The position numbers and the translations under genes were made by a program. A stretch of DNA of 63,854 nt, filler included, from Klebsormidium nitens (Eukaryota > Plantae > Klebsormidiophyceae), in NCBI GenBank assembly GCA_000708835.1. It is 3 parts of 3 records of this genome, joined end to end, with 100 filler letters (N's around TTAATTAATTAA, not from the genome) between each part and the next. Parts side by side here need not be neighbours in the genome. Positions count along the whole stretch, not along the records: positions 1 to 31,116 come from DF237763.1; positions 31,217 to 59,042 come from DF237773.1; 1 more part is not named here. One strand, written 5' to 3'. The notes beneath the pieces were generated by a model that worked only from the letters and a program-made list of their open reading frames with translations, was not told where the DNA came from and searched no databases. How positions within the stretch are numbered: position 1 is the stretch's first letter; every line of letters begins with the position of its first letter. This document shows positions 28,933 to 47,837 of the stretch, in pieces.

Positions 28933-31351
28933 TCGGCGCCGACTGGACCGCGGTCGGCGGCCAGACCGAACCGTCGGACTCTAGGCACCTCGCATGTACA
29001 GTGGGCATAGCCCCTCTGCCGGAGTTCATGATTGCGGCCAGCTGAGTTGCATCGGGCAGGTTGGGGCCCCCAAGAATGCTGGCACCGTAAAGATGCAGCT
29101 TGATTATTGAATGCAACATGACGTTCGCAGTGCGGCGATGCCACCGATATCACACTGGCCTAGAATCTCGGAGCACTGCATTACCAAAGCCTATATGCGG
29201 CATGATCCGAGGCTTTGATGCGGACAAACTCGCAGTACCATTGCAAATTCAATGACTATAAGTGCAATTCCTTGCAAATTATCAATGCCCGGTTAAAGTT
29301 CTATGCAATTGCAACAAGGAGAAGTTGCCAATTGTACGTGGCGGCGCAGGCTTTTCAAGCCCATCGCGGGGATCTTCTGGTAGCTACGCTCATGAGTACA
29401 GCGTTCGGCGAAACTTACCCACATAAACCCAATAGCCTCTTCGAGAATCTCCTTACAGCTGAATAAGGTTCTTCTTTGGTTCCCAGGCATCAGTGTGCTC
29501 GAGCCCATACCTTGAACCATTTGACGTGAAACTCGAGGCTTGGTTCCTTTTTCGTGTTTAACTTTGCGGTCATCTACTCGTACTCTTTCGATCTCATACT
29601 ACCAATGAGTCGTCGATTTCGATGGGTGGTGGAGGCGGCTGCACTCGGGCCGCTCCGATCGAGTCTGTAGCCTCTTCACAAATTTACGTGAAACACGTTG
29701 TGTGTGACGGTTGACTAGCTTAAGCGAAGCGCTGGCAAGATAACTACACGCGACACAAGCAACCATGTGCGGAAACCATGGTTGCCTGCACGCGTTTTTT
29801 AACAAAGGCGCAGCTCTGTAGAAATGTTGTCTTTCTGCTCAAGCCTACAGCCTTTCTGCTTGCTGGTTGGGACTTGTTTCCAAGGATCCCCGCAAGCCTA
29901 CTACGTCTCATTTTTGTTCGCGTTCAATGAAGTTTCGAATTATGGAGAGGCAGTCCACGAGCGCACTCGACTCTGCATCCCTTAGTCACGTCTAAGGCTT
30001 CCGTCCAGCTAGTCAGAAAGCATACCTACGATCCGATGGTAGAGCGTCATGCACCATGCCAAGCAATCCTGGTCACTGTTATGAACTCAGTGTGGTCATG
30101 CTGGCCGCTGCATCACAACACTTGCTAACTAAGCATGATCACTGTGAACTCTACGAAGTATTTGGTGGCGTAATTAATTGATTTACCGTTAACTACGTCA
30201 CATCGTGACTGTACTCATATGCCGCAACCTGGCATATAAGCTAACCTGAAAAGTTGAACACTGGTGACGATGCGCGCTTAGACCTAACTATGGCCCATCC
30301 ATCACACTGGTTACACCTCCCTGAAACGCTGACTTGGGTTGATTCTGAGTAGAAGGACAGGGCCTGTCTGCAGCCACCAGAAAGCTACTTGAGGCTTGCA
30401 AGGCTTGATAGTAGTAGCCTGTAGGCTTAGCCTCCTTGATCTGCTCCTCAAACTTCTTCCCCCAGATTTGGATCGGATTAATTCACTGGAGGCTCCGGGC
30501 GCTGATGCAGGAGATCCACTGTGGTGGGATTCAGTGGCTTCCTTGCTACCAGAGTCCCCACTGCCATTTCCACTGCCACTGCTTTTGGAGGGGTTGACCA
30601 TCGAGGTCAGGGTCGAGTCCACCCTGCCACTGTGCCCCGTGTTCCCCGGATTGCCCTCTTCAGCCTGTGAAGAGGGGGAGTCGGAATTGAAACGTGTTTA
30701 CTTCTTGTGAGCATGGGAGAGGCGCGAAGGTGCCTCGTTATAAAGTTCTCGGAGAGAAGATGGTGTAATTGAGGCTACACCTTTTGTGGAATCCGGAGAC
30801 TATGTGTCTCATTCCTGCTCCCCTAAGTGGGAGTTCAAGCATGCATAATCTCATGTGTATGATATTACGAGGCGCAGACTTGCAGCCAGTCACCATGCAT
30901 AGACTCAAAAAGTATGTCCGTTTTGATTTCAACCGGATCCGGCCATCCAACGCCGTGGAACTCGCTCGAGGTGCAACTCGCGGCCGCACTGCCCGTGTGA
31001 CGTGACACAAATGAGCATAGCTATAGCTCATAAGCATAGAGTCACCGTTACAGACCCAAGCCTTTAAATTCTCGGACTTTGAAAAATCCTGCATTCCGGG
31101 CATGCGGTGCCATGCCNNNNNNNNNNNNNNNNNNNNNNNNNNNNNNNNNNNNNNNNNNNNTTAATTAATTAANNNNNNNNNNNNNNNNNNNNNNNNNNNN
31201 NNNNNNNNNNNNNNNNGCTTGTGGAGGCGGTGTAAGAGGGCCGTATACTGGCCTATTGTTTTGAGAGTCCTCCCTTCGCCGGAGAGGAGAGTGGTCAAGT
31301 CCATCTAGATGTTTTGAAGGCTGAACAAAATAAGTGCACTTCGGACGCTTC

Positions 31352-32307
31352 TCAAACTCGCCTGTATACACGTTCTGCAATCTCGGCAGAGTGCCCCATA
31401 CTCGCAGCAACAGCCTTCCGCTTTTGCAGAGTCGTGTCGTCCTTGTAGAGCTCGCTCAGAAAGATCTTCCGGAGCATCCAGGACCCGACCCGTCTGTTCT
31501 CGTTCGCAAAAATCTGTGACGAGGTTTGCGACAAGTAGGCGGGGGTCATGGGAATGTCACCATCCTTTAGGTTGGAAAGCAAGTATTTCCTCGGGAAGAG
31601 TCGGAGGCTGTCGGAGATGACTTTTATTCAGGGGTTTCGGAAACACGTGCGTCTGATCGCCGTACGCCTTGTGTGTCTTATAGCACTTGTCTTAGAAGGA
31701 GGGTGTAGCAGCCAGGTGACTCTTCGACGAGCACGTTCGTGCCTTTTTCTGCTTCGGTTTGCTCGCGACCGTATGGGATGATCTTGACGTGCGCAAAGTC
31801 GTTACGCAATGGGCAGATTCTACTGTAGAGATTCAGGATCGCATGGTGTGTGATCAGCTTCCTGTCTTCGACGGTGATATCCTCGACATTCTTCACAACA
31901 ATCTTCTTCTTGATGGTTCGTTGAAGCTGCTTGATCTTATCACGAACGTCGTTGAAGGTTATCCAATTCTTCAACTCTCGGTCCGTTTTCGACTGTGCTA
32001 AGTTTTCGTTGTCAGAGATTTCCTTAACGCACTTTTCTAGCTCCTCTGAGTACTTCATGAGCAACTCTCCATCCTTGTTGCCCTTCAGAAGGACAATGAC
32101 GGGTACAATGTACAGCTTACGAGATGGGGCCTTGTAGTGTGAAAGGGATGCCATAACATTCTCCACGTCTTGCAACCAGTCCAAGTCAGAAAAGTAGTCA
32201 TCATCGGACTGAGTCACCATTCTGTGCAGACGGTTAAGAATCGAGATGTACTGAGTGACCGTTGTGTCGGACCTTTTGGGGCCGCTCAATAGGTTCCGTA
32301 AAACCAT
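31352..32307 (-). pseudogene. Tyrosine recombinase/integrase (OLV11-like), interrupted by two frameshifts
   Basis: Joined frames give CPLRNDFA (catalytic Arg), YKTHKAYG (Lys), MLRKIF, MGHS and RVY (Tyr) in the canonical order. Frameshifts near 31690 and 31625. Confidence 0.8.
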
Positions 32308-32364
32308 TCATCTGGTTTGTAATTGAGATAATTTTCTCGCTCGGTATGGCAGGTTACAAGAAGG

Positions 32365-33624
32365 ATGGAAGATGATGATTACTGCATCGTGGAGTATGCA
32401 CAATTGGATGCTGACGGGATGCGCCTTTCAAAGGAAGACTGTGCACTTGCAAGAAAGGCAAAGGAGGTTGCCTGTCAACGTGACCAAATTTTGCAGCTCC
32501 TAGGCGAGATTAAGGACTCAGTGGGCTCCTTCGACGAAGCTCGCCTGCTGTATCGCAATTGGAGGGTGAGAGTACTAAAGTCATTGAGACGACAGCGGAT
32601 CTTTGACGAATTACCAGAGTTCTCCGGCGTGTGTGGTTCTTGCAGGCAGGACGTGGGGTATTACAGTGTCCACGCGATCGTCAAGAGCGGCTCGGTTGAA
32701 TGGATTTGCCACTCATGTGACGTCATGGATAATCAGGACCTTGCAGATTTGCGGGCGGCCGTAGATGCCAACCTCCTCAAGCTGCGAACCTCTTTGAACG
32801 AGCTCGCGGAGGTGGCCTCCCTTCAGCAGGTACAGAAGCTGATCCGCATAAGGGACGTCTTGAAAGCATCTGCAAAGGCCCCGGGGGAACGATACGAAGT
32901 GCCTCGAATCGGTGGTCACGAATTCTTCGAGTGGAAGCTCTTAGTGATTGACCCCATGCCCAACTTTCCTAAAGAGGAACTAGAGAGGAGGGAGTTTTGT
33001 GCAATGATGTCTACAAAGGAGCGGGCCGATTTGACCAGACTAATGAAGCAGGTCGAAAGGCTGCATCAACGTTATTTTCATACGGATTTGCTGGGGCTGA
33101 TCGCCGATTCGGTGAAGACGCGTAACATGCACATGCAGAAGCGCTTCGAGACGATTCGGAAGCCGGCCCTTTTCGAAAGCCTGTCGCCGGAGGCAGCCAA
33201 GGCCCTCTGGGATGCACAAAAGGGCAAGTGTTCGAGCTGTGGGGACGACATGCTCTGGAGCAGACTGTTTGGCGGAGGCTGGCTTTGTCCTGAGCTCGAC
33301 AGGACGGATGTTAGATTGGGCACATACGTCGACAATTGCACGTGGATGTGTAGATGCTGCAATACGTTCAAGGGGTCGACGTTGGACGTACGAGCCTACG
33401 ATAGGGTGCATTTGGACACGCTTGAGAACGTAATGGGACGGCTTCCCGAAGTTTCAGATGAGTCGATGAAGTTATTGTCCGCGGAGGTCGATCGTCAAGG
33501 TGGCAGGGACGCCCACCTCAAATGGTTGCGGGAGAAGAGTGCGCCGGCACCACAGCCTGTGGCACCACTGGCACCACATCTGGCACCGCCACCAGCATCT
33601 GGCACCACATGCGCCACAGCATAG
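32365..33624 (+). CDS. 419-aa protein with a C-terminal EndoVII/HNH-like Zn nuclease domain
   Basis: Intact ORF. QKGKCSSCG...ELDRTD...YVDNCTWMCRCCNTFKG matches the CxxC...DRxD...N...CxxCN pattern; a further CxxC pair lies in the N-terminal half. Confidence 0.65.
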   Translation: MEDDDYCIVEYAQLDADGMRLSKEDCALARKAKEVACQRDQILQLLGEIKDSVGSFDEARLLYRNWRVRVLKSLRRQRIFDELPEFSGVCGSCRQDVGYYSVHAIVKSGSVEWICHSCDVMDNQDLADLRAAVDANLLKLRTSLNELAEVASLQQVQKLIRIRDVLKASAKAPGERYEVPRIGGHEFFEWKLLVIDPMPNFPKEELERREFCAMMSTKERADLTRLMKQVERLHQRYFHTDLLGLIADSVKTRNMHMQKRFETIRKPALFESLSPEAAKALWDAQKGKCSSCGDDMLWSRLFGGGWLCPELDRTDVRLGTYVDNCTWMCRCCNTFKGSTLDVRAYDRVHLDTLENVMGRLPEVSDESMKLLSAEVDRQGGRDAHLKWLREKSAPAPQPVAPLAPHLAPPPASGTTCATA

Positions 33625-33670
33625 AGTTCTCAAACGAGATTGTTTTTGCATTTCTGTTCCATAGCTTACC

Positions 33671-33838: not shown

Positions 33839-33937
33839 AGAGTAACAAATCGAACGGATTCTAGAAAAGAAACCCTTCGTGCAAGCCTCTTGCGGGAGCG
33901 TTTGGTGCAGCAGGCGACGGATGGTCCTTAGCAACCA

Positions 33938-34330
33938 CTAACAGTTCTCTTCAAGGAACCGCAGAGCGGCCTTCTGCCAAGGTGACTTGGGGGACTTTGG
34001 TGATGTACTTGCATCAGCTGTCATGGATTCAAATTCACAGAAGGCATCGAATAAGGTGTTCTTGTCTGCTGCATCGTTGAGTGCTTCGGGTGCCGTGTAG
34101 GCCCTGCTGCACATGATTACTTCTTCCATGCGCCTGAGACCGTCGAGGAGAACCTTTGGTGCGTGGGCATTGGAAAGGGTGTCGATGAACTGTGAAGCAT
34201 AGTCTTCAAAGGTCAGCCTGTGTCTCGAAGAGGTCGTGTAAAAATGTTCCTTTGACTCGGGAGTGGGATCCATTCTAGGTTGTGGCCCAGATTTGCGTAA
34301 GTGTTGTGCGGACGCGCCATTTATTACCAT
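33938..34330 (-). CDS. Hypothetical protein (~110-130 aa)
   Basis: Intact ORF with protein-like composition in the compact block; no family recognised. Confidence 0.5.
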   Translation of the reverse strand: MVINGASAQHLRKSGPQPRMDPTPESKEHFYTTSSRHRLTFEDYASQFIDTLSNAHAPKVLLDGLRRMEEVIMCSRAYTAPEALNDAADKNTLFDAFCEFESMTADASTSPKSPKSPWQKAALRFLEENC

Positions 34331-34806: not shown

Positions 34807-35247
34807 TTGCAGGTTCATATGGCGCAGTCGATTGCTTTTGGTAGAGTGGCCATGCCTGTACAAGCCTTTCGTGAGAGGGAGGAGAGGAGCTACCGAGTCA
34901 AGAGGGGGCAACTACCAGCCAGGGTGCACGTTTTGGAGTTCGGACAGGCCGTACTATGCAACCCCACCGGGATGCGGGATAACAAGCTGTGTGCAGTTGC
35001 GTTCCCGTCGAAGCCCCTGCTTCAGTCCGTGAATGCGGTTTTGGAAAACCAGTTCAGGATTGGGGATATGAGCACGGACGCCTTGCTGACTCACATAGAG
35101 ACCTTGCAAGATGTCGAGGGTGTTTTTGAGGTGAATGACTGCTTCTGCCAGTTGGAGAATAGGAAGACCTACTACATGGTCACTCAGATTCTCAATGAAG
35201 GCGATGAAGCATTCATCTCTGAAAGAGTTCTCGAATTTGACAACTGA
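34807..35247 (+). CDS. Hypothetical protein (146 aa)
   Basis: Intact ORF, co-directional and tightly packed with the next ORFs; no family recognised. Confidence 0.45.
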   Translation: MQVHMAQSIAFGRVAMPVQAFREREERSYRVKRGQLPARVHVLEFGQAVLCNPTGMRDNKLCAVAFPSKPLLQSVNAVLENQFRIGDMSTDALLTHIETLQDVEGVFEVNDCFCQLENRKTYYMVTQILNEGDEAFISERVLEFDN

Positions 35248-35569: not shown

Positions 35570-35934
35570 TTTCAACACTTTGACGTGCCCGACTGCATGG
35601 TGACGTTACACCCAAGCACTGGCCTTGTCAGAGCTTGGACGCGAAGGGAACAGCATGGTCCACGCCGAGCAGTTACGTCCAAGATGACGTTCCACATGAT
35701 CCAATAATGGTCTTACATGGCACGTGACAGAAACCGTGGACACAACAAAAGTGATACCGCCGCGTGTCCATATCGCGAGATTGTGAAGATTACCCCGTCC
35801 GCTGCGGGCAGCAGGTTTGAACTGTACGGTAGTGAGACGGCCAAATTGTTCCAACGCTACAACTGGAGCTGCGTCAAATTCCCAAAGGGTGCAAAAGTTT
35901 GCCAAAGTTTGCCTCCTACGGGAGGTGGGCAAAC

Positions 35935-37077
35935 ATGGGGGAGACCTATGGGTCGTTGTTAACCAGACAGCAGCAACATAAAGTGTCTGAGATAGCCCTC
36001 GCCATTGCCCCAGACGGGTTCACCATCTCTTGTAATGATGACTATGCCATTTTAGGTTACAAGCACAAAGATCGTGCGCGCAATAGAGTGCGTGAAATAG
36101 GGCGAGAGGGATTTGACTACATTGTTGTTCGTAAACCTAATCAGGTTCCCTGGGAGGACTATCTTCTTACCCGCCAGTTTGTGGAGGAGATTCTTGCACG
36201 GTCCAGGAGTGAACTTGGGAGGGTAATACTGGGGTTTTATCGAGAAGTGAGGGACACATATTGCAGAGGTACTGAAGACGGGAGGAAACGTCAGGCCAAG
36301 TTGATGGCAGCTCATGCAGACAACAAGGTAAGGTAAATGTGCAAGAATGTATTGCAAAGGTTACACCTGATTTGAATCAAATGCTGGCATTTTCTAGGTT
36401 TTGTAGGTCTGGGGCACTTGATAGAGTTCTTGCGTTGATCTGCCTCTGCCCTATCTGGGACACTTATGTCCTCTGCGGTTTTCAATGCATGAGCAGCTTG
36501 AGGATTGTGTTTCCGTAACGCAGGTTCTGTTTTCTGGCAGGTGTCTTCCGCTGTAATCCTTCAACCACTAGCGACAATAGCGCTTCGTCAAGCAGAGCGG
36601 CCGCAATCCCCAGGGCATGCCCAGCAAGCGCAGCCACGTGGCCTCATGCAAGCTGGGCAGTCCCAACAAATGCAGCCACGGCGAGTGCAACAAGCAATGC
36701 CGTTCATGCAAGCTGGGCCGCAAGCGCAGCCAGTTGGGCTGCTTAAAGCGCAGCTAGATGGACAGCTGCCGCATGCCCGGCAAGTGCAGCCAGTTGGGCA
36801 GCTCATACAAGAAGGGCAACCCAGTGGGATGGGGGGACAGTCCCAACACGGGCCTTGGTCAAGACATCCCACCCCAGAAAGACCGCAAGCCAGATTGGGA
36901 CCGCATTTTGTTAGGTACTCGCAGTCCGGATCAGGGCAGCCCAATCAACCACAGCAACAAAGTCTGGGGGCTTCTGAGGTTTTACGACAAAGGCAGTGGC
37001 AGCAGTGGTCTCAACAAGTCCGTCAAGGCCTGGAGCAGGAGGGGCAGCAGGTACTGTTTATCATCAGAGTCACCTAA
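35935..37077 (+). CDS. AntA/MSV199-like DNA-binding domain, probably spliced to a Gln-rich exon
   Basis: FTISCNDDYAILGYKHKDRARNRV...EGFDY...EDYLLT...GRVILGFY pattern. Donor AAG|GTAAGG at 36327/36328 and acceptor TTTTCTGGCAG|GTG at 36540/36541, both phase 0. Confidence 0.55.
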
Positions 37078-37639
37078 AGTGTCGCCGAAGTGATCGCTTG
37101 AGGCAATAAAAAAGGCGAAAATCGGCACCATATGTACTGTTCAGTTCTATTTGGGGTCAGGCGTTTTTGCATGTTTGCACTGCAATTTAGGCTGATATAT
37201 CGTCATTTGTTTCCAGGTAACACCGAACGTTCAGGTACAACAACGAACTTGTATCTAATCCGACGCGTGTGTGTGAGTAAGATGCATTTCCTTGAGGGTG
37301 CGCGGCAGCTAAACGTTCTAAAGGAGAGTATGAATCAAAGATGCGTTTATGTGTAAATCTCCAATGGTTCCATTTTCACAAGGTTTGGTAAGGTGAATCC
37401 CTTCATGAACCTCGGTTCAGAGCCCCACCTACTCGACAACCAAGGTGTGTTCTCCTTATTAACACGTGTTTTGTGCAGCATGTCCTGCAAGCTTTACGAG
37501 AGCAAAGACCATTGAGAGGGGTATCTGCACCAGAGCGCTGATGGTACATATGATGGTTTGTGTAGAATAGAAGTATGATGCCACCTATCAACAGAGATTT
37601 GAGATGATTGGAGTGCTCGCTGGAGGTTTTCCTAATTTA

Positions 37640-37945
37640 CGTTGTGGTGAGATCGGAAGCTTTGGATTGTTAATTGAGCGGCCCTTGTGCTATCCATTTA
37701 GTAAGTGCCCGAATCTTAGCCACCTCTCGGTACGTTGTATGTTCTCGGTAGAACCGCATCTCGTCCAGATCATCCACGATTTCGTCAACGTTCCAATTCT
37801 GATGTATTTGTTGCACGCGCGCGAGTACTTTTGTACCTCGACTCCATGTTTAGATAGACGTGCATCCTGCAAAGTAAGCATAGCAACTATGTCTTCCGAA
37901 GACTGTCGCCCATATAAGTATGGTTCCAATTCTGACAAAATCTTC
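37640..37945 (-). pseudogene. Truncated, diverged copy of the 3' part of the F-box/XPA-like gene at 44904-46187
   Basis: ELEPYLYGRQSSEDIVAMLTLQDAR...VEVQKYSRACNKYIRIG versus ELELYLYGRQSLKDILAMLNLQDAR...LEVQKYSRTCNEYIRIG. Confidence 0.85.
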
Positions 37946-38619
37946 GGAATTTTGCGTGTATCTGCGCTGACCATGCCATGAAGTCAGTCAGTGCACACTC
38001 TCGTATGTTCTGATCTTGCTTTAGTCCGCATCTACATGCGACCGTTTGGTACCGAAGGAAAACTGATCATCCTCATTTAGCTACGTAAACCTACAGAGTG
38101 AACGAGGATCCCTGCTGAAAGTCTCCACAATGAAGTATGGGACGACACTCATGATGTACGATATCATCCATAACTGCGTGATTATAAATATCAAATGGTG
38201 TGTGCAGCTTGCATGCACTTGCAAATCCTCTACATGCCTAAAACCGATGGCAACAGGGGACGGCTCTATGGCATTATTCTTCCTCAGGTCGCCGTACTCC
38301 TTTCTGCGTCTCTTGGCTTCTGGCACGTCAAGCAGCCTGTTCTTGATGTCGTCCATGTACACGCTCTAAGATATGCCTGCATACTATCCGGCATCTGAGC
38401 GAGGTCCTTCAGCACGCTGGGCGGCGGCATAAGTGCCAGATCCACCGCTTGGGCGGTTGAAGTATTTCTTGAACGCCACCTCGAACGTGGCACGCACGGC
38501 TTGCCCGTATCCGTCCAACATGTCAGGCACCGTGAGTGAAGGGGTGTGCCCTTGCTCTCCTTGGACCCCTTGACCTCAAAGTAAACTCAGCCTCCCTTCG
38601 GTCCGTGCCTCTCTGCACT

Positions 38620-38810
38620 TGCACCACTTGGTACTCGGCACAATCTGCACCACCCGGTACTTGGCACCACCTGCACCACCTGGTAATTGGCACCACCTGG
38701 CACCACACCTGGCACCACCTGGAACTTGGCACCACTCGGTGCCTCGGTGTCTGTTCCTCGGTGCCTCGGTGTGCCTCAGTGCCGTGCGATGATGGTGCCT
38801 GGTGGTGCCT
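38620..38810. repeat. GGCACCA(C) minisatellite followed by complementary GGTGCC units
   Basis: About 8 (G)GCACCAC units at 38620-38736, then CGGTGCCT/GGTGCC units to ~38810. A similar array lies at 33546-33612. Confidence 0.75.
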
Positions 38811-38998
38811 GTTACGACTATAAAGCACGCCTTTGCCATTCATTTTCATTGATCACTCGTTTTCGAAAAGCGTTCGAGCTTAGGGAGTTGAGGGGGTGCG
38901 CTTTGGAGGCGTAGGAGCGTCGGAGCCGGCCGCGTTCTTTGATAAGGGTGAGTCTACATACATAGAGATTCTTCACCTGGTAGCAAGCCAGAAACTTT

Positions 38999-39350
38999 GT
39001 ACTACATCTACTGTTATAAATTTCTCACACATTTCGGGTCTACTCAATCATTTTGGAAAGGGGGGGATTAGGTACATACAGATTTCCCAACCTCTGCCGA
39101 TCTCGAAAAGTCGTACTACGTCTACTGTTATAAATTTCTCACACAGTCTCTCTCTTCCGAAGAGGCGAAGAAATTTATAACAGTAGGTGTAGTAGGTTTC
39201 TTCTTCTTTCCAAAGGAGTAGCGAATATGTATATACGGACTTTTGTGTAAGAAAATTATAACAGTAGGTGTAGTAGGTTTCTTCTTCTTTCCAAAGGAGT
39301 AGCGAATATGTACATATGATAAGAACTTTACAACAGAAGGCATAGTAGGT
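38999..39350. repeat. Array of a ~27-bp motif in direct and inverted orientation (candidate origin/iterons)
   Basis: TACTAC(A/G)TCTACTGTTATAAATTTCT at 38999 and 39113. Reverse-complement copies at 39169 and 39250, and a degenerate copy at 39322. The 39169 and 39250 copies sit in an 81-bp-period direct repeat. Confidence 0.85.
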
Positions 39351-39421
39351 TCTCTCCGCTTTCTAATAAACTGACTCTTTTCCAGGGGCCAGTGCGCGGG
39401 GGCCGGTTTCGTGGGGGTGTC

Positions 39422-40610
39422 CAGCAGCATCCGGTTGTCGACTTCCGACGAAGAGGTGCGCACCAAGCAAAGTGAGAGACATTCGCCGACGTTCCTTCCA
39501 AGATCAGCATCCTTGACTTGATTGCTTCCGTCATGGGGGCGTTGAACCCTAGGCGAACCGGATCTGAACTATCCAAAAAGTTCGAGGACCAAGGCGTTAC
39601 CGTTTGTAACGCCCTCGCTCCGTTTGCAGGGCGAGTTCAGCACGAGATGTCGGTGACAGGTATACGGGGCGTGGTTCGGGCAGAACGTTGCAGACCGTCT
39701 CATCCTCAAGGATGGACCCAAGCTCCGCGACTTCATTTCGACGCATTGCGACACCGGTGAAGGGTTGCTCGTTGCACGCCGCGAGTTCAGGGGTGCATTT
39801 CAAGCATGGCAGGATGGAGAACCCGTTCCTCAAGGCCTACCCGATGCTATGAACGCATTGGGCTACGTTTCTTCGACGAGGGCATATGGTACGAATAGGA
39901 AGTCCACCGGGGTCTACGTCGGCTTAGGCCTGCGCTCACAGCAGCATCCGGTGGTCGAGGTCGAGACCGCCGCTCCTGAACCTGACGTCGAGGAAACCTC
40001 CGGCGAAGAGGTGCGCGCCCAGCAGAGCGACCGGGACTTGGTCCTCGACAACCAACTCTTTGGCGAGTTCCGAGGTGCCAGGATGAGGAAGACTGACGAC
40101 GTGCCCCCCAAGATCAGCATCATCGACCTGATTGCTGCTGTGACTGGGGCCTTAAATCCCAGGCAAACCTGGTCCGAACTATCCAAAAAGTTCGTGGAAG
40201 AAGGTGTCCATTTTTTTGGACACCCTCGCAAAGTTCCCAGGGCAAGGGCAAAACGAGAAGCCGGTGACGGATGCAAGGTTGTGGTCACTATCATCAACCG
40301 TTTGGGTGGGCACCGAATCAGGAAGACTGACGACGTCCCGCCCAAAATCAGCATCATCGACCTTATTGCAGCTGTCACGGGGGCCTTTGAATCCCAGGCA
40401 CACCCTGTCCGAAGGTGTCCAGGTTTTGGACACCTTCGCAAAGTTTCCAGGGCGAGAGCATAACGAGAGGTTGGTGACGGATGCAAGGTTGTGGTCATCA
40501 GCCGTTTGGGTGGGCACCGGATCAGGAAAACTGACGACGTGCCCCCCAAGATCAGAATCCTCGAATTGATTGCTGCTGTTACCGGCCCCTCGGGCCCCCG
40601 GCCCCTGTGA
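39422..40610 (+). pseudogene. Frameshifted gene: four Bro-N-like repeats plus a P4/D5 primase C-terminal winged-helix-like domain
   Basis: RKTDDVPPKISIIDLIAAVTG repeated at ~39488, 40083, 40317 and 40520, with FPGQGQNEKPVTDAR in an alternate frame. LRDFISTHC...FRGAFQAW...LGY...GVYVGLGLR at ~39720-39935. Confidence 0.6.
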
Positions 40611-40692: not shown

Positions 40693-42461
40693 ATGGGAGA
40701 GCATAGAGAGATGACAGAGGAGATCGTGCTGCTGCCGCCCCAAGAGCCGCATGTGACGCGGCTCCTGAATATTTTACGCCATCATGCATTTGCTCTGGAC
40801 CTGTCCGCGCTTGGGGCTGGAAAGACGTTCTCTGGTTCGAAGATCGCACTCGAATCGGGCCTGCCCAACGTAATAGTGATCAGCCCCGTCTCGGTCCAAC
40901 CAAAATGGCAGGAGATGCACGAGAAGTATGGGGTGCCGATCAGGCACAACCTCAGCTACTGTGGCGTCCGTTCGGTCAAGGGGAAGCAGCCCAAGCACGG
41001 GCTGCTATCTCGGCGGGACTACACAGTGGACGTCACGATGCCGCGAGGACCTCCCCGGCAACTCGAGAAGACGGACTTCCAAGTAACGGACACCTTCAAG
41101 TTGCTCCTGGGAGAGGGAGTTCTCCTGATCGTGGACGAGATGCAGCACCTCAAGAACGTCTCGTCACAGTTTGCCGCCTGCCAAACACTGATCAAGGCGG
41201 TCACGGATTCGTACGAGGCCGGGGGGCGCTCGAGGGCGCTCTTGCTGTCCGGAAGCCCAATCGACAAGCAGGAGCAAGCCGTCACTCTCTTTCGGACCCT
41301 GAACGTCATGCAGCACCCCGATCTGTGTAAATTTAACCCAGGCACCAGGGTCATGGAGCTGCGTGGGGTGTCGGAAATCATCGATTTTTGCCAGGGGATC
41401 GACAATGTTGCCACCGAACGGATCCTGGCAGCAAAACGCTACTGGATGTGTGCTGAGAGCGTGATTCGGCCGATGTGTTACACCCTGTTCCAAGAGGTCC
41501 TGAAGCCGAACCTCTCGAGCACGATGCCGCCCTTGCGCTGGCCGGTACTCTGCTCAAACTCAATGCATTCTACCGGATTGACGACGAAGAGGATCGGAAG
41601 GCCCTGTCGGCTGGCGTGCAAGCCTTAGAGTACGCCGTCCATTACGATCGACGGACGGGCCGAGTGAGCATGGCCGAGGGGGCTGATTCACTGCGTGCCC
41701 TGTGCGCTGCCCTGGTGAAGATCGAGAGCTCCAAGGTTCGAACGTTCGCCCGGGTGGCTCTCAAGGCGCTACGGTCGAACTCTCAGCAGAAGGTTGTCAT
41801 TTGCGTCAACTACAACGACTCCCTGCAAAGCCTGCAGGACTTATTAGCTGCTTACTCGCCGCTGGTTCTGAACGGCGCGGTGCCTAAGCAAGAACGGAAG
41901 CACATCATCGACAAGTTTCAGCTTCCGGCCGATGAGCACAGGGTGCTGCTGGGGAACGTCTCCGTCTGCTCAACGGGCATAGACCTGGACGACAAGGACG
42001 GTGCGTGGCCCCGGCTGGCGTTGATCAGCCCAAACTACAGCACTCTGACTCTGTATCAGCTGGGCCACCGTTTTCAACGGATGGACACCAAGTCGGAGGG
42101 GACAGTGCATATGGTATTTGCAAAACATGCGCATGAGTTGCCGATCCTCAATGCTCTCTCGAGAAAGGGTGCTGTCATGAGAGAGACGACGCCGGAGCAG
42201 GTGAATGCCGGCATCAAGTTTCCCGGTGACTTCCCAAGTTGGGTCGAGGAAGATCTGGAGACCTCGCTCATGAGGAGTGGATTCAAGGGATTCAAAGCGA
42301 ACAGGGAGCGGCGCAAGTGGGCACGAAGTGTGATCGGAAGTGCGCTCATGGAATGGTCGCTTCGACCAGGAGGGGTTCTCTATAGGCTGGCCATGAGACG
42401 GTTTGAAGCGTGCAAAGTAGATAAACTATCCATGCCAGACAATATAGGATGTCCGTTGTAA
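40693..42461 (+). pseudogene. SF2 (DExH/SNF2-like) helicase of giant-virus type, split by one frameshift near 41530-41560
   Basis: LGAGKT (I), LIVDEMQH (II), LLSGSP (III) in the first frame; VICVNY (IV), STGIDLDD (V), QLGHRFQR (VI) in the second frame. Confidence 0.85.
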
Positions 42462-42709: not shown

Positions 42710-43407
42710 ATGGGGCAAAGAATGGCAACATCTGCTCCCGTTTGTCGAGCAACAGTTGTTGTCACTTGCAACCAATGTGGCAAGCGACTCATGCTCAAGG
42801 ACTCGTTCAGCAAGAGCATGAGGCAGAACGGAACATTGGTGTCGGTGTATATCTGCTCCATGGAGTGCTTGTGTGTAGTCGGGGGCTGCGAGCCGATCAA
42901 GGTTGTACAGTTTGCCAACACGGCCTGCTACGAGTGCAGGGGGAAGGTACCGTTGAAGATATGGGAAGGCAAGATGGTTTAAGAGCTCAAGCGCCTCGGA
43001 TACGAGTACAGCTATTATGACTCACTCGTCCCGTGCGCTCAGGCGAAAGGGATCAAGGGGTTCAGACCTGACTTCATCTTTGTCGGCAAGGACTTTGTGG
43101 TCATTCTCGAGGTGGACGAGGATATGCACCGCCACTACGAATGTCGTGCGAGGTGGGACGGATTGGGGACATCAAGGATGCCGTCGAGCTCCCTCTCCTT
43201 CTCATCAGGCTCAACCCTTCCGAAGGCCGCATCAAGATGCTAGAAGAGACAATGAAGTGGGCGCTCTCAATGGGAGACGCTGTCAAGGCAGCACAGGACG
43301 CAGGGCTCATTCTCGCTTATCACGGGTATTCGGACGGCAGGAGGGCCGAGCTTCACAAGCAGATGGTCAGGCAGAACGGCTTTGCATACGAGACCATTGT
43401 TCTGTAA
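42710..43407 (+). pseudogene. Zn-finger plus PD-(D/E)xK-like endonuclease, with a premature stop (42980-42982) and a frameshift (~43140)
   Basis: Reading through the TAA gives ELKRLGYEY...FRPDFIF...VILEVDEDMHRHYE; the shifted frame continues MSCEVGRI...LLLIRLNP. This is the RPD...LEVDE..H..Y..CE..R...IR.NP signature of NCLDV endonucleases. Confidence 0.75.
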
Positions 43408-43499
43408 CCGGCACAACACTGTTCTAGGAGGCCTCTGCGCCACCTCCAAAGTCGGTGCGGATGAAGCCTCTTGCGCTGATTGGCGGCCGCCTCTCTCGA

Positions 43500-44873
43500 T
43501 CCTCGTTGTGAGATCGCCACTCCCACAGCAAATGCCTACATGGGTACTATATCTTCGTCCAGAGAAAACCGGTCGCCGTGCTGCCCATCCTCGTGGCATA
43601 ATCCACTTGTTGCCACGACAGGTCATTCTTCTCAGCGGCCTCTGCGATCGTACTATATGTCTGCAGGAGCTTGCCCTCGAGATCGTGCTTGCGGACGGCT
43701 CTGTTAATTGTCCGGTTCCGATTTTGTTCCACCCTGGTCGCCCAGCGGAGGTTCCAGATCACGTCCTGGTCACAAATTCCATCGATGTGGTCGACCGTGT
43801 GCTCATCACTAGGGGGCGGACCGATGAAGGTGTGGGCCATGAGATTATAGACGCAGACAGTAACACGCTTCCCGGCGATCTGAAGCTCGACCTTATGTCG
43901 CCCGCACACGATGTTGCCCTCCGTGCGCCTCCCGTTGCTCAATTGAACGCGCCCCAAGCTGCTGACCCGTATGCTTCTGAGAACCCGCCCATCCAGCTTC
44001 GCATCCTTCCATTCTTCGCTAGGCCTGTCCGCTTGATCTACAACATGCACCGAGCACCTGAAGAACATGTAGCCACCGTACTCCTTGCTTGAACCTCCCT
44101 GGATGCACTTCTGCATCGTCTTCCTGTCGAGCCCCAGAGTTGATGCGGCGTCCCTGATCGAAGAGTACCGTTCCTCTTTGCTGCTCGCAACATGACGTAC
44201 AATAATTGGGAAGCCTCCGGTCACACTCCGCTTCTGACCCGACCCAGGGTTGTCCCTTGCGGTCTTCCGCTGGTGTTCCGGCCGCGTTAGCTCTTGAAGG
44301 TTTGCCCAGCTGTCGTTCTGAAGGGGCCGTTCCGACCCGTCCTCCGGTTTGGGCGAAGGAATGATGTGGTCGATCTCCATCCCGGGAGAAATCGCGCGCC
44401 CATGGGCGATCTCGAAGTTCAGGCGGTGGCGCTGGATCATCTGCCCGTTGATGTTGAACTGGATGTAGCCACTTTTAAATCTTCCCTTCAAGAAGCGCCC
44501 GACTTCACAACTCCAGACGCTGCCGTCAGGGAGCCCGTATATATTCATGAACTTGTAGTGCTGCTTCCAACCGTCGTAACTTGCTGGTGGCGCATTCTGC
44601 TCTGAATGCGAGCGGGAGTGGCGTGTCAGGTACCGCTTGTCAGTAAAAGTCTCACCACAGCCCACGACGTTGCACACAAACCTCCTAGTATCGGCGACCT
44701 GGCCGCGCTTGCGCTTGACTCCGGCCGTGACGCTCGTGGCAGCTGTAGAGCTTGCCATCAATGACTGCTGCTGAACCGTGGCACCCTTTGTTCCTAAGTC
44801 AGGTTCAAGTTGAAGGAAGCACTCCCAGGCACTCCAAGGAGCATGTATGGGAGTGGCGATCTCACAACGAGGA
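43500..44873. repeat. Perfect 26-bp inverted repeat pair (43500-43525 and 44848-44873) bracketing the HNH-NUMOD gene
   Basis: TCCTCGTTGTGAGATCGCCACTCCCA at 43500 and its exact reverse complement TGGGAGTGGCGATCTCACAACGAGGA at 44848. Confidence 0.9.
43547..44758 (-). CDS. C2H2 zinc finger plus double HNH/NUMOD homing-endonuclease-like protein
   Basis: Intact ORF, likely start MASSTAA at 44758. KRKR; CNVVGC...HSRSH (C2H2); HRL...IDHI...NLQELT (HNH); YSSIRDAA (NUMOD1); EEWK...VSSLGRV (NUMOD4); VDHID...NLRWAT (HNH); YSTIAEAA (NUMOD1). Confidence 0.88.
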   Translation of the reverse strand: MASSTAATSVTAGVKRKRGQVADTRRFVCNVVGCGETFTDKRYLTRHSRSHSEQNAPPASYDGWKQHYKFMNIYGLPDGSVWSCEVGRFLKGRFKSGYIQFNINGQMIQRHRLNFEIAHGRAISPGMEIDHIIPSPKPEDGSERPLQNDSWANLQELTRPEHQRKTARDNPGSGQKRSVTGGFPIIVRHVASSKEERYSSIRDAASTLGLDRKTMQKCIQGGSSKEYGGYMFFRCSVHVVDQADRPSEEWKDAKLDGRVLRSIRVSSLGRVQLSNGRRTEGNIVCGRHKVELQIAGKRVTVCVYNLMAHTFIGPPPSDEHTVDHIDGICDQDVIWNLRWATRVEQNRNRTINRAVRKHDLEGKLLQTYSTIAEAAEKNDLSWQQVDYATRMGSTATGFLWTKI

Positions 44874-44903
44874 CAAGGAGAAACACTAGGTGCATCACCC
44901 ACC

Positions 44904-46187
44904 TTAATTCTGGTGGTGCAGCAGCCTAAGCTCTACACTACCCAACCTTTGTTCCGAAGTTTGGGTTCTTCCAAGCTTGCGCTGTAGAGAGATCGGAAGC
45001 CTCGGGTCATTGCTTGACCTCCCTTGTGCTATCCATTTAGTAAGTGCCCGAATCTTAGCCACCTCTGAAGAACTATAGAGCGTCTCGGTCCAGTACGTTG
45101 TATGTTCTCGGTAGAACCGCATCTCGTCCAGATCATCCACGATCTCGTCAACGTTCCCTGCACCAATTCTGATGTATTCGTTGCACGTGCGCGAGTACTT
45201 TTGTACCTCGAGTCCTCGTTCAGAAAGAGCCTCTGCCAGCTCTTGCTTTCGTGCATCCTGCAAATTAAGCATAGCAAGTATGTCTTTCAAAGATTGTCGC
45301 CCATATAAGTATAGTTCCAACTCTGTCAGGAGTATTTTTTCTGCACGTCCCCCAAGATTCTGCCAAAGCTTTGATGCTCGAACTGCAACTTCGCAGTGGC
45401 GCTCCAACCCCCCTTGCACGTAACTATGTCGTGCGTGGGCAAGGGCGAGGCCGAGATCTCCAGTGCAATGTGGTGCTGCTGATGCAAAGGACATGTACCG
45501 CCGAATCCTTTCCTTGACTCGTTTCTGCCCACCGATTCCATTTCTCACGTAATCAGAACAGGATGCAGAGTACATGAGCTCACGGTTGTGCTTACCTTCT
45601 GGATCGCTCTCGTTCATAAGCTTTACGGCCACGTCTGTTCGAAGCCTCCTCGGTTCACCGCGTTTCCGCTGCTTCGACCGCGAGGCATCCTCAGCAGCGT
45701 TCAGCCCCCCAGGGCCACCGTACTTGTCCAACGAAGCAGTAAGAACGTCTTGCCATCTGTACATACGTATATTGTTGTGGTATGCGCGGTGCAGTGTTTG
45801 GAATACAGGGCAAAAGCTCAGATCCTGGTCATCAAGGAGAAGCTTTTTCTTGCATGCTGAGTGGCTCAGCAATCTGAGGTGTCCTGGTCCGTTCTCCGCC
45901 GTGCAATTCTGGCAGGCATTGATGGCCGGGTCAAAGGGATATACCACCCTCGTCGAACGTTTGCATCCATCACAAGGCCGCAACGTTCCGGTCACTCTTT
46001 GTACCTTTGTACCTGGACTTCTCGTCCTCATACCTTCCTCGTATGCTTTCTTCCGTTTAGCCCAGCCATCCAGTGCCACGTTCCGAAACGCCCGCGAGAT
46101 CGGGGCGATTTGGAGGAGCAGGCGTGGGTCAGCTGACGCACGCTCAAATAAAAGGTCAGGGAGTACATCTACTAGCTCGCCGGCCAT
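44904..46187 (-). CDS. F-box-like N-terminus plus XPA/RAD14-like domain and a C-terminal helical domain (427 aa)
   Basis: Intact intronless ORF. LPDLLF...ISRAFR (F-box-like); CDGC...CQNC; LLSHSACKKKLLLDDQDL...YRWQDV...KYGGPGGL (XPA C-terminal-like). Confidence 0.6.
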   Translation of the reverse strand: MAGELVDVLPDLLFERASADPRLLLQIAPISRAFRNVALDGWAKRKKAYEEGMRTRSPGTKVQRVTGTLRPCDGCKRSTRVVYPFDPAINACQNCTAENGPGHLRLLSHSACKKKLLLDDQDLSFCPVFQTLHRAYHNNIRMYRWQDVLTASLDKYGGPGGLNAAEDASRSKQRKRGEPRRLRTDVAVKLMNESDPEGKHNRELMYSASCSDYVRNGIGGQKRVKERIRRYMSFASAAPHCTGDLGLALAHARHSYVQGGLERHCEVAVRASKLWQNLGGRAEKILLTELELYLYGRQSLKDILAMLNLQDARKQELAEALSERGLEVQKYSRTCNEYIRIGAGNVDEIVDDLDEMRFYREHTTYWTETLYSSSEVAKIRALTKWIAQGRSSNDPRLPISLQRKLGRTQTSEQRLGSVELRLLHHQN

Positions 46188-47837
46188 ATCTGTGGCTGCA
46201 TTTTAGTTGCTACTGGTCGCCCGCGCAAATTCCTAAAGTGCGGCCCGTTTTTTTGAGTGCAATATTTTAAAGCATGTCCGCCCAGCTTTCAAGCTGTTGA
46301 TCATCATTTGCAGCTCGTCAACCGTCTTCTGTGCGATCGGGGCACTCGTCTTATCTGCGTCTTCTGGACTGCACAAGTATAAGAAGTCATACCGCATATA
46401 CACCACCATGTGGCAGTGGGATCGTGAACTAGCCGGCATTGACACCTAAACCCGTATATATGCGATGGAAGCCAATGGCCGCACTGGCTACGGCATATTG
46501 TAACGAGACTATGTGCATGCGCTCCGATTTGATATACAATTCACAAAAGGACATGCAGCTGGCATCCTTACTTTGGTAGCTTACGTGCGCACATGCTATA
46601 TTGCACTGAGAGGTCAAGCTACATTGCAGCTCCAAACATCTTGATTAGAAATGTGCAGTTTGCTTCAGATACGATCTCGGCCTTTTTTACATCCATCTGC
46701 TGAAGCTTGGCATCTATTGCACCTATAATGCAAGCGCTAGGATATCCGGAATATGTAAACCGATATAATGATTGTCAGATTTTGACAGATAGAACGTGGG
46801 GCTTCATATGATGCATTATAAGTGGTGCCGCTGCACTCGGTCGCACAATTACCATGTATTATACATTTCATAATTGCATTGAAATTACATATGTCTATAA
46901 CACAAACAATCATGTACAATATGGGCGCGCATGAGCGGATCATTGATACAACTGCTGATGTTGATTATATGTGCTATCTCGGTTTTTAGATTGTTGCCAA
47001 ACATTTGGCGAGGGGCATGCATGTAGCTGCGAGCTTGAAGAGGGGCATGCACTAGTTCAACTCTGTAGAACAAACGTGAAATCTTGGAATGAACAGTGCA
47101 AAGATAGTGTCAATAACACTATCTGGCAGGACATAATGCAACCCCCTTAACACCCAATCTCGCCAATACAGTTCAACGTTTCCCTATGTTCGCACTGCCA
47201 ACTCCCTTGCACCACATTTGGCATGTGTGGCTTGGAGCAACGCTACCATTTTTCCATTGAATGCACAGATCACCTTCACCGTAACCATGTGTTGACAAGC
47301 TCGACCCCAAGAAAATTCCCGCTTGCCCCCGTTCAGGATCGCACCAGATCCCTTGCGACCCGTCTCGATCAAACGCAATCAAACGCCAAAATCAAACATT
47401 TAACCCAAAGGTAAGGGAGTGACAGAAACGGAAAACCCCTTACGCCCTCAGCAGAAGTGGCAGCAAAGGTCACAATTCAAACGACACGCTTGATGAATGA
47501 ACGCATCCTGCCTGGCTCCAGGACTTTACGTGTGAGAATAAAGACTGCCCAGTGTGTGCTCTATGGTACATGAGTAGCGACCACTAAACAGCAGTTCGTT
47601 AGGAAGCTCACGTGTTTTGACAACCAGTTAATTGACGCTTGGAGCATATCCTCTCCATCTATAAAAACCAGAACAAAAAAGCATTAGCGCTAGTGCATCC
47701 GCCCCCAACTGGCCTTTGCGAAAGGTGAGTCCTGTCTACTTCCAACATAATGTCGGTCCGCGTGCCCTGCCTGCCATCTGCCTGCCTGTCCTAGTGCCTA
47801 TCCTGCACAGATTGGTTTCCTATGCCCCATGCAATTC

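What the first reader, a model, noticed from the sequence alone, without database searches (positions are those of the whole stretch)
31217..46300. Candidate capsid-less, tyrosine-recombinase-mobilised viral-like element in an algal genome
Seen: about 15 kb of packed, intronless genes with a tyrosine recombinase at one edge, then three nuclease types, an SF2 helicase, AntA-like and Bro-N-like DNA-binding domains, a primase winged helix and an origin-like repeat array. No major capsid protein, A32 ATPase, pPolB or protease is recognisable. Known: OLV11-like recombinases mark Polinton-like viruses, and the other domains are common in NCLDVs. Inference: either a fragment of an endogenised virus, or an integrative element that parasitises giant viruses and carries cargo, conceptually between transpovirons and fungal Starships. 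This is the best candidate for an undescribed system here.
Basis: partly seen in the sequence, partly recalled or inferred. Interest (0 to 1): 0.9.

Follow-up and report, generated by a model that had tools for sequence, protein, structure and literature searches.

The report
Decayed giant-virus fragment in Klebsormidium
The block is a broken-down piece of a giant algal virus lodged in the genome of the alga Klebsormidium nitens and cut off by the end of a small assembly scaffold, which is a known kind of viral fossil in this species and not a new capsid-less mobile element.

Summary
The piece is Klebsormidium nitens NIES-2285 scaffold DF237773.1, bases 1-27826 (100% identity). The finding's left edge is therefore a scaffold end, not a closable gap.

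Confirmed:
- A tyrosine recombinase, shown by fold and catalytic motifs, but broken.
- An SNF2-like SF2 helicase, also broken.
- An endonuclease-VII-like ORF.
- A double-HNH/NUMOD endonuclease.
- A palindromic repeat array.
- No capsid, A32, PolB or protease gene inside the block.

Not confirmed: AntA, Bro-N, a primase winged helix, and a third nuclease type.

The recombinase is not terminal. The first 29 codons of the next viral gene run off the scaffold end. In metagenomic relatives (72-93% DNA identity, some with intact genes) the same recombinase/endonuclease pair sits inside densely packed giant-virus-like DNA. That DNA includes a PBCV-1-type minor capsid protein P8, TFIIS, YqaJ, SET, SWIB and DUF5767.

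Helicase relatives lie mostly on giant-virus MAGs. A second, equally decayed colinear copy exists and extends more than 8 kb beyond the recombinase.

Multiple rearranged phycodnavirus-like inserts in this genome were published in 2017.

Verdict: an ordinary, scaffold-truncated endogenous giant-virus fragment. Interest is low.

The parts
31218..31304 (-). First 29 codons of the gene that follows the recombinase in relatives (279-286 aa, no family). It is cut by the scaffold end.
   Evidence: tblastn with the L003, L004 and L006 proteins: 86-90% identity to L003 and L004, E about 1e-14.
31352..32307 (-). Tyrosine recombinase, a broken gene: 2 frameshifts and 1 in-frame stop (counts only).
   Evidence: Intact relatives P0157, P0169 and P0161. 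Invariant R, K, R, H and Y in alignment A1. Foldseek matches Cre, XerA and XerH and recombinases of algal giant viruses. Break counts.
32365..33624 (+). Intact 419-aa ORF with an endonuclease-VII-like C-terminal domain. It is divergently paired with the recombinase, 58 nt away, as in the relatives.
   Evidence: phrog_1035 at 1e-7. Homologues P0002-P0006. Same 58-nt spacing in L003, L004 and L005. The structure test was inconclusive.
33938..34330 (-). 130-aa ORF of no known family, conserved in L003, L004 and L005.
   Evidence: tblastx and blastn blocks. dN/dS 0.48 against L005.
34807..35247 (+). 146-aa ORF of no known family, conserved in L003, L004 and L005. It is the last gene of the four-gene module shared with L003.
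   Evidence: dN/dS 0.34 against L005.
35899..36336 (+). 145-aa ORF. No family was found.
   Evidence: No Pfam or PHROG hit. The DNA is conserved in L005 at 81%.
36400..38930 (.). Stretch with no ORF that has a domain assignment. It holds a Q/P-rich low-complexity ORF, a 26-nt tandem repeat (38616-38735), and scrambled partial duplicates of 44969-45328 and 42566-42633.
   Evidence: The same arrangement is present in L005.
38938..39388 (.). Palindromic repeat array: 2 forward and 3 reverse copies of a roughly 26-41-nt core. Function unknown.
   Evidence: the repeat finder families D4 and D6 and pairs I1-I3. Core matches. The same layout occurs in L009 at 89% identity. No copies were found elsewhere.
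39487..40590 (+). The domain is unassigned.
   Evidence: Repeat families D2, D3 and D5. Only a weak hit to phrog_15286, at 0.0046. No Pfam hit and no PDB hit.
40693..42461 (+). SNF2/Rad54-like SF2 helicase, a broken gene: 1 frameshift (count only).
   Evidence: Helicase_C and phrog_62. 1974 relatives, full length 500-650 aa. Family profile against Rad54, 4.9e-10. 44 IMG/VR loci, mostly giant-virus MAGs. Break count.
42869..44850 (.). Roughly 2-kb segment that carries almost all of the endonuclease ORF (43547-44902) and is absent from the colinear relative L009. It is an indel consistent with a homing-endonuclease cassette.
   Evidence: blastn of the window against L009.
43547..44902 (-). Intact 451-aa ORF: C2H2 zinc finger, two HNH_3-type endonuclease domains and NUMOD DNA-binding modules.
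   Evidence: Pfam HNH_3 2.9e-9, I-HmuI_NUMOD-like 1.2e-7, NUMOD1. phrog_59 7e-21, two stretches.
44904..46187 (-). Intact 427-aa ORF of no known family. It has a zinc-finger region with a very weak XPA/Rad14-like match.
   Evidence: One homologue among 5.8 billion proteins (P0001, 66%). 89% DNA identity in L009. Rad14 E 0.17. dN/dS 0.48 against L009.
46381..51575 (.). 5.2-kb segment absent from L009 at this site. It holds an intronless ZUFSP/C78-type deubiquitinase ORF (47838-49037, -). It is not shown to be viral.
   Evidence: Peptidase_C78 4.9e-41. ZUFSP structures 6.5e-32. No IMG/VR relative.
51576..52430 (.). Second patch shared with the relative L009 (86-88% identity). Part of it is shared with a gene of the giant-virus-like contig L003.

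Best explanation
The block is a scaffold-truncated, partly decayed fragment of an endogenous giant virus in the nuclear genome of Klebsormidium nitens NIES-2285. The virus is a phycodnavirus-like member of the Nucleocytoviricota.

**Shown**
- The DNA is scaffold DF237773.1 from its first base.
- The viral genes continue past that end.
- The recombinase and helicase are broken.
- The gene order is conserved in a second decayed copy, and in part in intact giant-virus-like contigs that carry a chlorovirus-type minor capsid gene and transcription genes.

**Inferred**
- Giant-virus DNA entered the genome. This may have used the virus's own tyrosine recombinase, as proposed for phaeoviruses, or it may have been accidental capture.
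- The insert was then silenced and rearranged. It shows internal duplications, indels and a homing-type HNH cassette, and non-viral DNA lies within or beside it.

Today the block does nothing as a unit. The recombinase is a viral gene of a family shared by algal giant viruses and Polinton-like viruses, not the engine of a separate element.
For: - **Identity.** The piece is 100% identical to DF237773.1 bases 1-14031. The annotated proteins are KFL_008240010 and KFL_008240020.
- **The block continues past the scaffold end.** 31218-31304 encodes the first 29 residues of the next syntenic gene.
- **Synteny with giant-virus-like contigs.** The relatives are L003, L004, L005 and L006. L006 carries P8_CR, the minor capsid protein P8, at 3.5e-29, plus SET, SWIB and DUF5767. 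L003 carries TFIIS, YqaJ and DUF5767.
- **Second copy.** L005 and L009 overlap by 435 nt at 97.9%. Together they carry the whole block colinearly at 82-93% identity, with at least 8.8 kb more viral DNA to the left of the recombinase.
- **Recombinase.** Its closest structures are in AaV, HaV-01, PoV, TetV-1 and klosneuviruses.
- **Helicase.** Its relatives are mostly on GVMAG contigs or on contigs of 100-580 kb.
- **Decay.** Break counts are. dN/dS rises from 0.15-0.25 against distant relatives to 0.34-0.48 against the closest copy.
- **Literature.** Several distinct, rearranged phycodnavirus-like inserts are reported in this assembly (PMC5294986). Genes of viral origin in K. nitens are enriched in the methylated fraction (PMC12344493).
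Against: - No universal NCLDV core gene (MCP, PolB, A32, VLTF3, D5) lies in the window, or in the parts of the relatives' contigs that I could read. The giant-virus assignment rests on P8, TFIIS, YqaJ, contig sizes of 31-117 kb, and the helicase and recombinase relatives.
- It is not shown whether the metagenomic relatives are free viruses or other endogenous copies.
- Host flanks are not proven. The right part has no clear spliced host gene, so integration is supported only by gene decay, by a KDZ transposase gene on the same scaffold, and by the published analysis.
- The three large ORFs (419, 451 and 427 aa) are still intact.
Confidence: 0.85

Rival explanations
1. The block is a self-contained, capsid-less integrative element, mobilised by its tyrosine recombinase, that rides in giant-virus or algal genomes and carries cargo.
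For: - The recombinase, the endonuclease-VII-like gene and two small ORFs form a conserved four-gene module. Gene content to its right differs between L003 and the window.
- Relatives of the recombinase are common on small mobile virus-like genomes.
Against: - The left edge is a scaffold end, and a further syntenic viral gene is cut there.
- To the left of the recombinase, gene order is conserved for at least 9 kb in L003, L005 and L006, and it includes a minor capsid gene.
- No terminal repeats or target duplications were found.
- The recombinase is broken.
- Only one annotated copy was seen in K. nitens.
Confidence: 0.04
2. The block is a fragment of an integrated Polinton-like virus or virophage rather than of a giant virus.
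For: - Distant recombinase relatives (24-31% identity) lie near the ends of 20-30-kb IMG/VR contigs. Three of these contigs were scanned: all three encode an A32 ATPase and two encode a D5-like primase-helicase.
- A Qinghai Lake virophage protein is among the structural matches.
Against: - None of the other window proteins has a relative in those 80 loci.
- The close relatives sit on 31-117-kb contigs with PBCV-1-type P8, TFIIS, SET and SWIB.
- Helicase relatives are on giant-virus MAGs.
- There is no MCP, penton, A32 or protease in the block.
Confidence: 0.06
3. The scaffold is contaminating free-virus DNA or a chimeric misassembly, not integrated DNA.
For: - It is a small 31-kb scaffold.
- The published survey found no clear host-virus junction on most viral contigs of this assembly.
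- There is an assembly gap at 53641-53660.
Against: - The recombinase and helicase are broken. The closest copy carries different breaks, except for one shared stop.
- There are scrambled internal duplicates.
- Non-viral DNA and a KDZ transposase gene lie on the same scaffold.
- The published analysis favours integration.
Confidence: 0.04

Closest known systems
Endogenous NCLDV (phycodnavirus-like) inserts of Klebsormidium flaccidum/nitens (Gallot-Lavallée & Blanc 2017, PMC5294986)
   Same: Same genome assembly, and the same kind of small, virus-dominated, rearranged scaffold. Annotation errors that fuse viral ORFs into chimeric gene models are also seen here: a 925-aa model joins the HNH ORF, the 427-aa ORF and the C78 ORF.
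   Different: DF237773 is not among the scaffolds named in the main text of that paper. It carries no NCLDV core gene, so a survey based on core genes would not flag it.
Giant endogenous viral elements (GEVEs) of green algae, and integrated phaeoviruses of brown algae
   Same: Giant-virus DNA in an algal nuclear genome. A virus-family tyrosine recombinase is present, and a Feldmannia virus protein is among the structural matches. Gene decay and rearrangement are also seen.
   Different: Only a fragment of about 15 to 21 kb is visible. There are no core genes, no defined ends and no evidence of a latent cycle, and the recombinase is inactive.
Tyrosine recombinases of Polinton-like viruses and virophages
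   Same: Same fold and catalytic residues. Distant family members lie on roughly 27-kb contigs that have A32 and D5-like genes.
   Different: Only 24-31% identity. No other gene is shared. No named OLV11 protein came back from any search, so 'OLV11-like' itself was not tested directly.
Transpovirons and fungal Starships
   Same: The only shared idea is a recombinase or helicase together with cargo.
   Different: No terminal repeats, no transpoviron-type gene set and no Starship captain (DUF3435) were found. The block is not a bounded unit.

Membership tests
Tyrosine recombinase superfamily | Catalytic R..K..(H)xxR..H/W..Y residues | tested here: met
   R167, K208/K211, R277, H303 and Y312 are invariant in 17 relatives. 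The window copy aligns over its whole length but is broken.
Tyrosine recombinase superfamily | Two-domain Cre/Xer/lambda-Int fold | tested here: met
   AF2 model of the intact relative P0157, pLDDT 81. Foldseek matches XerA, Cre and XerH at E 4e-5 to 1e-4, with TM-scores up to 0.54. No Pfam Phage_integrase hit.
Endogenous giant virus (Nucleocytoviricota) fragment | NCLDV core genes (MCP, PolB, A32, VLTF3, D5) in the element | tested here: not met
   None in 31217-47411 in six frames. Reported elsewhere in the same assembly (PMC5294986). The window fragment is truncated.
Endogenous giant virus (Nucleocytoviricota) fragment | Synteny with contigs that carry giant-virus structural and transcription genes | tested here: met
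   P8_CR 3.5e-29, TFIIS_M 6.4e-14, YqaJ 6.1e-10, and DUF5767 on L003, L005 and L006, next to the same recombinase/endonuclease pair.
Endogenous giant virus (Nucleocytoviricota) fragment | Integration in host DNA (a host-virus junction) | tested here: inconclusive
   Similarity to viral relatives ends at about 46380 and resumes at 51576-52430. The flanks hold a ZUFSP-like ORF, an ankyrin-repeat ORF and a KDZ transposase. No unambiguous spliced host gene was shown.
Polinton-like virus / virophage | Double-jelly-roll MCP, penton protein, A32-type ATPase (and a protease) | tested here: not met
   No Pfam match in six frames. Pfam may miss divergent MCPs of Polinton-like viruses, but it did detect A32 in the real contigs of that size.
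Bounded mobile element (transpoviron- or Starship-like) | Defined termini (terminal repeats or target-site duplications) and multiple copies that share them | tested here: not met
   No terminal repeats. The left end is a scaffold end. The second copy extends beyond it.
SNF2/Rad54-like SF2 helicase | Walker A, DExH followed by KN, and a Helicase_C domain | tested here: met
   G33, G35, K36, D141, E142, K147 and N148 are invariant in alignment A3. Helicase_C is found in 21 of 30 relatives and SNF2-rel_dom in 3. Rad54 1z3i matches at 4.9e-10.
Bro-N / KilA-N / AntA DNA-binding domains; primase winged helix | A profile match to the family | tested here: not met
   No Pfam or PHROG match at E <= 0.01 in any frame. 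No PDB sequence match. Remote homology below these thresholds is not excluded.
T4 endonuclease VII-like nuclease | A profile match and the fold of T4 endonuclease VII | tested here: inconclusive
   phrog_1035 at 1e-7. No Pfam hit. The AF2 domain model has pLDDT 61, and T4 EndoVII appears only at E 8.5.

The most novel reading that the evidence does not exclude
The conserved four-gene module (tyrosine recombinase, endonuclease-VII-like gene and two small ORFs) lies where gene order stops being shared between related giant-virus-like contigs. It could mark the edge of an integrative island nested in giant-virus genomes. It could also be the integration module of a latent, phaeovirus-style giant virus of streptophyte algae whose intact relatives still circulate.
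Probability: 0.08. Interest if true: 0.65.

Novelty: new member of a known kind. Interest (0 to 1): 0.22.

Why it matters
The result mainly corrects the finding. The 'capsid-less' appearance comes from a 31-kb scaffold ending inside a viral insert, so this is not a new class of element.

It has modest value beyond that:
- It adds a scaffold without core genes to the known set of K. nitens giant-virus inserts.
- It shows that a tyrosine-recombinase family invisible to Pfam is shared by algal giant viruses and Polinton-like-virus-sized elements.
- It points to metagenomic contigs (JGI 3300060284 and 3300060285) with intact relatives. These may represent an extant giant-virus lineage associated with Klebsormidium-like algae.

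Tried and rejected
- **Exact look-up of the 427-aa ORF.** Not on record.
- **Sequence searches of solved structures.** The helicase pieces and the 419-aa ORF gave nothing. A profile of the 419-aa family lost its C-terminal columns and gave only noise.
- **Endonuclease-VII domain by structure.** AF2 gave a low-confidence model and Foldseek was inconclusive.
- **Array core pattern.** Zero hits in IMG/VR and in metagenome contigs. The latter collection evidently lacks the samples that hold the relatives. A recombinase scan there gave only one distant hit.
- **Walking along contig L006 to look for core genes.** The remaining parts of the 54.5-, 92.6- and 116.8-kb contigs are therefore unread.
- **Supplement of PMC5294986.** No mention of DF237773 in the one file held as text.
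- **WD40-like matches of the 145-aa region.** These come from one 39-residue stretch matching repeated designed proteins, so I treated them as spurious.
- **tRNA and Rfam scans.** Both empty.
- **Ends of the 5.2-kb segment.** No terminal inverted repeat or target duplication.
- **Searches not possible.** No tool let me search the rest of the K. nitens assembly, so copy number in that genome rests on annotated proteins only.
- **Handling of broken genes.** The pieces of the broken genes were always searched apart.
- **Record of printed output.** One search printed the three-frame translation of the recombinase region as it stands. One search printed short junction sequences of two indels relative to L009. 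Neither was used to restore anything.


Full report
**1. What the piece is**

The 419-aa ORF next to the recombinase matches KFL_008240020 of Klebsormidium nitens. The locus fetched for that protein is scaffold DF237773.1 of assembly GCA_000708835.1, which is 31,164 nt long. Its bases 1-14031 are 100% identical to window 31217-45247. Window coordinate therefore equals scaffold coordinate plus 31216.

**2. Check of the observation**

*Recombinase, 31352-32307 (-).* The gene lies in three reading frames. Against an intact relative it shows 2 frameshifts and 1 in-frame stop (counts only). Pfam does not recognise it or its intact relatives.

Seventeen relatives conserve the residues expected of a tyrosine recombinase: R167, K208/K211, R277, H303 and Y312. 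An AlphaFold model of the intact 315-aa relative P0157 has pLDDT 81. It matches XerA, Cre, XerH and lambda integrase.

In the viral structure library the best matches are proteins of:
- Aureococcus anophagefferens virus
- Heterosigma akashiwo virus 01, annotated as a Tyr recombinase domain protein
- Pyramimonas orientalis virus
- Tetraselmis virus 1
- Hokovirus, Hyperionvirus and Harvfovirus
- with lower coverage, a Qinghai Lake virophage protein

*Helicase, 40693-42461 (+).* It is split by 1 frameshift. Its two pieces, searched apart, hit Helicase_C and phrog_62. The family is large: 1974 representatives, with full-length members of 500-650 aa. Its profile matches Rad54/SNF2 structures.

*Nucleases.* Only two ORFs with nuclease domains were found.
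- The 419-aa ORF has an endonuclease-VII-like C-terminus (phrog_1035, 1e-7). The structural test was inconclusive.
- The 451-aa ORF has a C2H2 finger, two HNH_3 domains and NUMOD modules.

*Repeat array.* The array at 38938-39388 is real. It has two forward and three reverse copies of a core. The same layout is kept at 89% identity in a relative.

*Six-frame scan.* All stop-to-stop segments of at least 70 aa in 31217-47411 were scanned against Pfam. The only credible families, those whose scores clear Pfam's own cut-off, were the HNH/NUMOD set and Helicase_C; five other matches fell below their cut-offs. There is no capsid, A32, PolB or protease, and equally no AntA, Bro-N or primase domain.

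*The 'Bro-N-like' stretch.* It consists of four diverged copies of a roughly 70-aa unit at 39487-40590. No family could be assigned.

*Density.* About 57% of the block is covered by ORFs that have a relative or a domain (my count). In the intact relative L006, called genes cover about 84% (my count). The stretch 36.4-39.6 kb holds low-complexity sequence and scrambled partial duplicates of 44969-45328 and 42566-42633.

**3. Relatives and what they show**

Protein searches led to contigs from two JGI metagenomes, 3300060284 and 3300060285.

| Locus | DNA identity | Window range matched | Source |
|---|---|---|---|
| L005 | 90% falling to 74% | 31222-38928 (colinear) | |
| L009 | 82-89% | 38924-46380 and 51576-52430 | |
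| L004 | 77-80% | recombinase/endonuclease module (31217-35250) | |
| L003 | 67-72% | recombinase/endonuclease module (31217-35250) | |
| L006 | protein level only | recombinase (31352-32307) | |

The tail of L005 overlaps the head of L009 by 435 nt at 97.9%. One related genome therefore carries the whole block in the same order.

That copy is also decayed. Its recombinase has 4 stops. Its endonuclease-VII-like gene has 1 frameshift and 3 stops. Its helicase has 2 frameshifts and 1 stop. Only one stop is shared with the window copy.

L005 continues for 8.8 kb to the left of the recombinase, with SWIB and DUF5767 genes. L003 and L006 have intact genes (315-aa and 314-aa recombinases) and dense packing. 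In L003, L004 and L005 the recombinase and the endonuclease-VII-like gene are divergent, with the same 58-nt spacer as in the window; in L006 the pair lies at the contig end, 42 nt apart.

- To the left of the recombinase in L006 come a 286-aa gene, SET, SWIB, DUF5767 and a gene matching Pfam P8_CR, 'Minor capsid protein P8 central region', at 3.5e-29. From my own knowledge, P8 is a minor capsid protein of the chlorovirus PBCV-1.
- To the right in L003 come an ethylene-receptor-like histidine kinase, TFIIS and YqaJ.

Window 31218-31304 (-) encodes the first 29 residues of the 279-aa gene that follows the recombinase in L003 and L004, at 86-90% identity and E about 1e-14. The viral block therefore runs off the scaffold end, and the recombinase is not its terminal gene.

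In IMG/VR the helicase family has 44 loci. Most are on giant-virus MAGs or on contigs of 100-580 kb. The closest full-length relative sits on a contig with Pkinase and DUF5906 genes.

**4. Boundaries and indels**

Compared with L009, the window has an extra segment of about 2 kb at 42869-44850 that carries almost all of the HNH endonuclease ORF. This is the pattern expected of a homing-endonuclease cassette.

The window also has an extra 5.2 kb at 46381-51575. That segment holds an intronless ZUFSP/C78-type deubiquitinase ORF. L009 has its own extra segments.

Similarity to L009 resumes at 51576-52430, and part of that patch also matches a gene of L003. Virus-derived DNA therefore reaches at least 52430, and 46300 is not a true end.

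No terminal repeats or target duplications were found. Further right lie an ankyrin-repeat ORF and a KDZ transposase that is cut by the piece's end.

**5. Selection**

| Comparison | dN/dS | dS |
|---|---|---|
| Window against its closest copy (L005/L009) | 0.34-0.48 | 0.09-0.18 |
| Window against more distant relatives (L001, L003, L004) | 0.15-0.25 | 0.50-1.24 |

These values are; the second row also includes one L009 comparison, the more divergent helicase N-terminal piece (dN/dS 0.25, dS 0.50). They fit genes that evolved under viral constraint and have since relaxed.

**6. Explanation**

The block is a fragment of an endogenous phycodnavirus-like giant virus. It is one more of the multiple, mutually rearranged NCLDV inserts already reported in this assembly. 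Those inserts include several PolB genes, six MCP, six ATPase and five VLTF3 genes on small virus-dominated contigs (PMC5294986). In K. nitens, genes of viral origin are enriched in the methylated fraction of the genome (PMC12344493).

How the DNA entered is inferred, not shown. A virus-encoded tyrosine recombinase makes active integration plausible, as proposed for phaeoviruses, but accidental capture is not excluded. As it stands the block is inactive as a unit.

**7. Rivals**

- *A bounded, recombinase-mobilised capsid-less element.* Disfavoured by the truncated left end, by at least 9 kb of conserved viral gene order to the left of the recombinase in three relatives, by the absence of termini, and by the broken recombinase.
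- *A Polinton-like virus fragment.* Disfavoured because only the recombinase is shared with the 20-30-kb IMG/VR contigs. Those contigs do encode A32 and D5-like genes.
- *Contamination.* Disfavoured by gene decay and by non-viral DNA on the same scaffold.

**8. Limits**

- No NCLDV core gene was seen in the DNA I could read.
- The rest of the K. nitens genome could not be searched.
- Host flanks are not proven.

**9. Verdict**

This is an ordinary case of a known phenomenon, and interest is low.

Noticed in passing
L003:15425-17506: A 693-aa ORF in a densely packed giant-virus-like metagenome contig. Its domains are ETR1_N, HisKA, HATPase_c and Response_reg, which is the architecture of a plant-type ethylene-receptor histidine kinase. 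It lies next to TFIIS and YqaJ genes.
   Followed up: no
window 58641-59042 (-): Kyakuja-Dileera-Zisupton (KDZ, Plavaka-type) transposase domain at 3.2e-12. It runs off the end of the piece.
   Followed up: partly
window 47838-49037 (-): Intronless 399-aa ORF of the ZUFSP/Mug105 (Peptidase_C78) deubiquitinase family. It lies in a 5.2-kb segment that the colinear relative L009 lacks. The K. nitens annotation fuses it with the HNH ORF and the 427-aa ORF into one 925-aa gene model.
   Followed up: partly
window 53039-53686 (-); repeats 53351-53647: Ankyrin-repeat ORF encoded by three 99-nt tandem repeats. It is interrupted by a 20-N assembly gap at 53641-53660.
   Followed up: no
window 47400-59042 (ORF not located): Weak matches to AID/APOBEC-like deaminase models (NAD1 at 0.0069, APOBEC_N at 0.0093) in one six-frame segment. 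Both are below the curated cut-offs.
   Followed up: no
window 44904-46187 (-) and 37629-38024: The 427-aa ORF has a single homologue among 5.8 billion proteins and a very weak XPA/Rad14-like match at residues 89-165 (E 0.17). A partial duplicate of its 3' end lies 7.3 kb away, and this duplicate is also present in L005.
   Followed up: partly
L010:13440-14108 and 11533-12486; L007: Giant-virus-like contigs that carry helicase relatives also encode an aquaporin (MIP), a Zf_WRKY19 protein, DUF5755, protein kinases and a DUF5906 (D5-like) gene.
   Followed up: no
L080, L051, L057 (IMG/VR contigs of about 27 kb): The distant subfamily of the recombinase (326-327 aa, including Tara Oceans 0.1-0.22 µm scaffolds) lies on contigs the size of Polinton-like viruses. 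All three contigs have a Pox_A32 ATPase. Two have D5_N/DUF5906. One ORF each matches GIY-YIG and a TET-associated glycosyltransferase.
   Followed up: partly
window 36505-37077 (+) and 38616-38735: A Q/P-rich low-complexity ORF, and a 26-nt tandem repeat (3.5 copies) with ORFs on both strands. Neither has a family.
   Followed up: no
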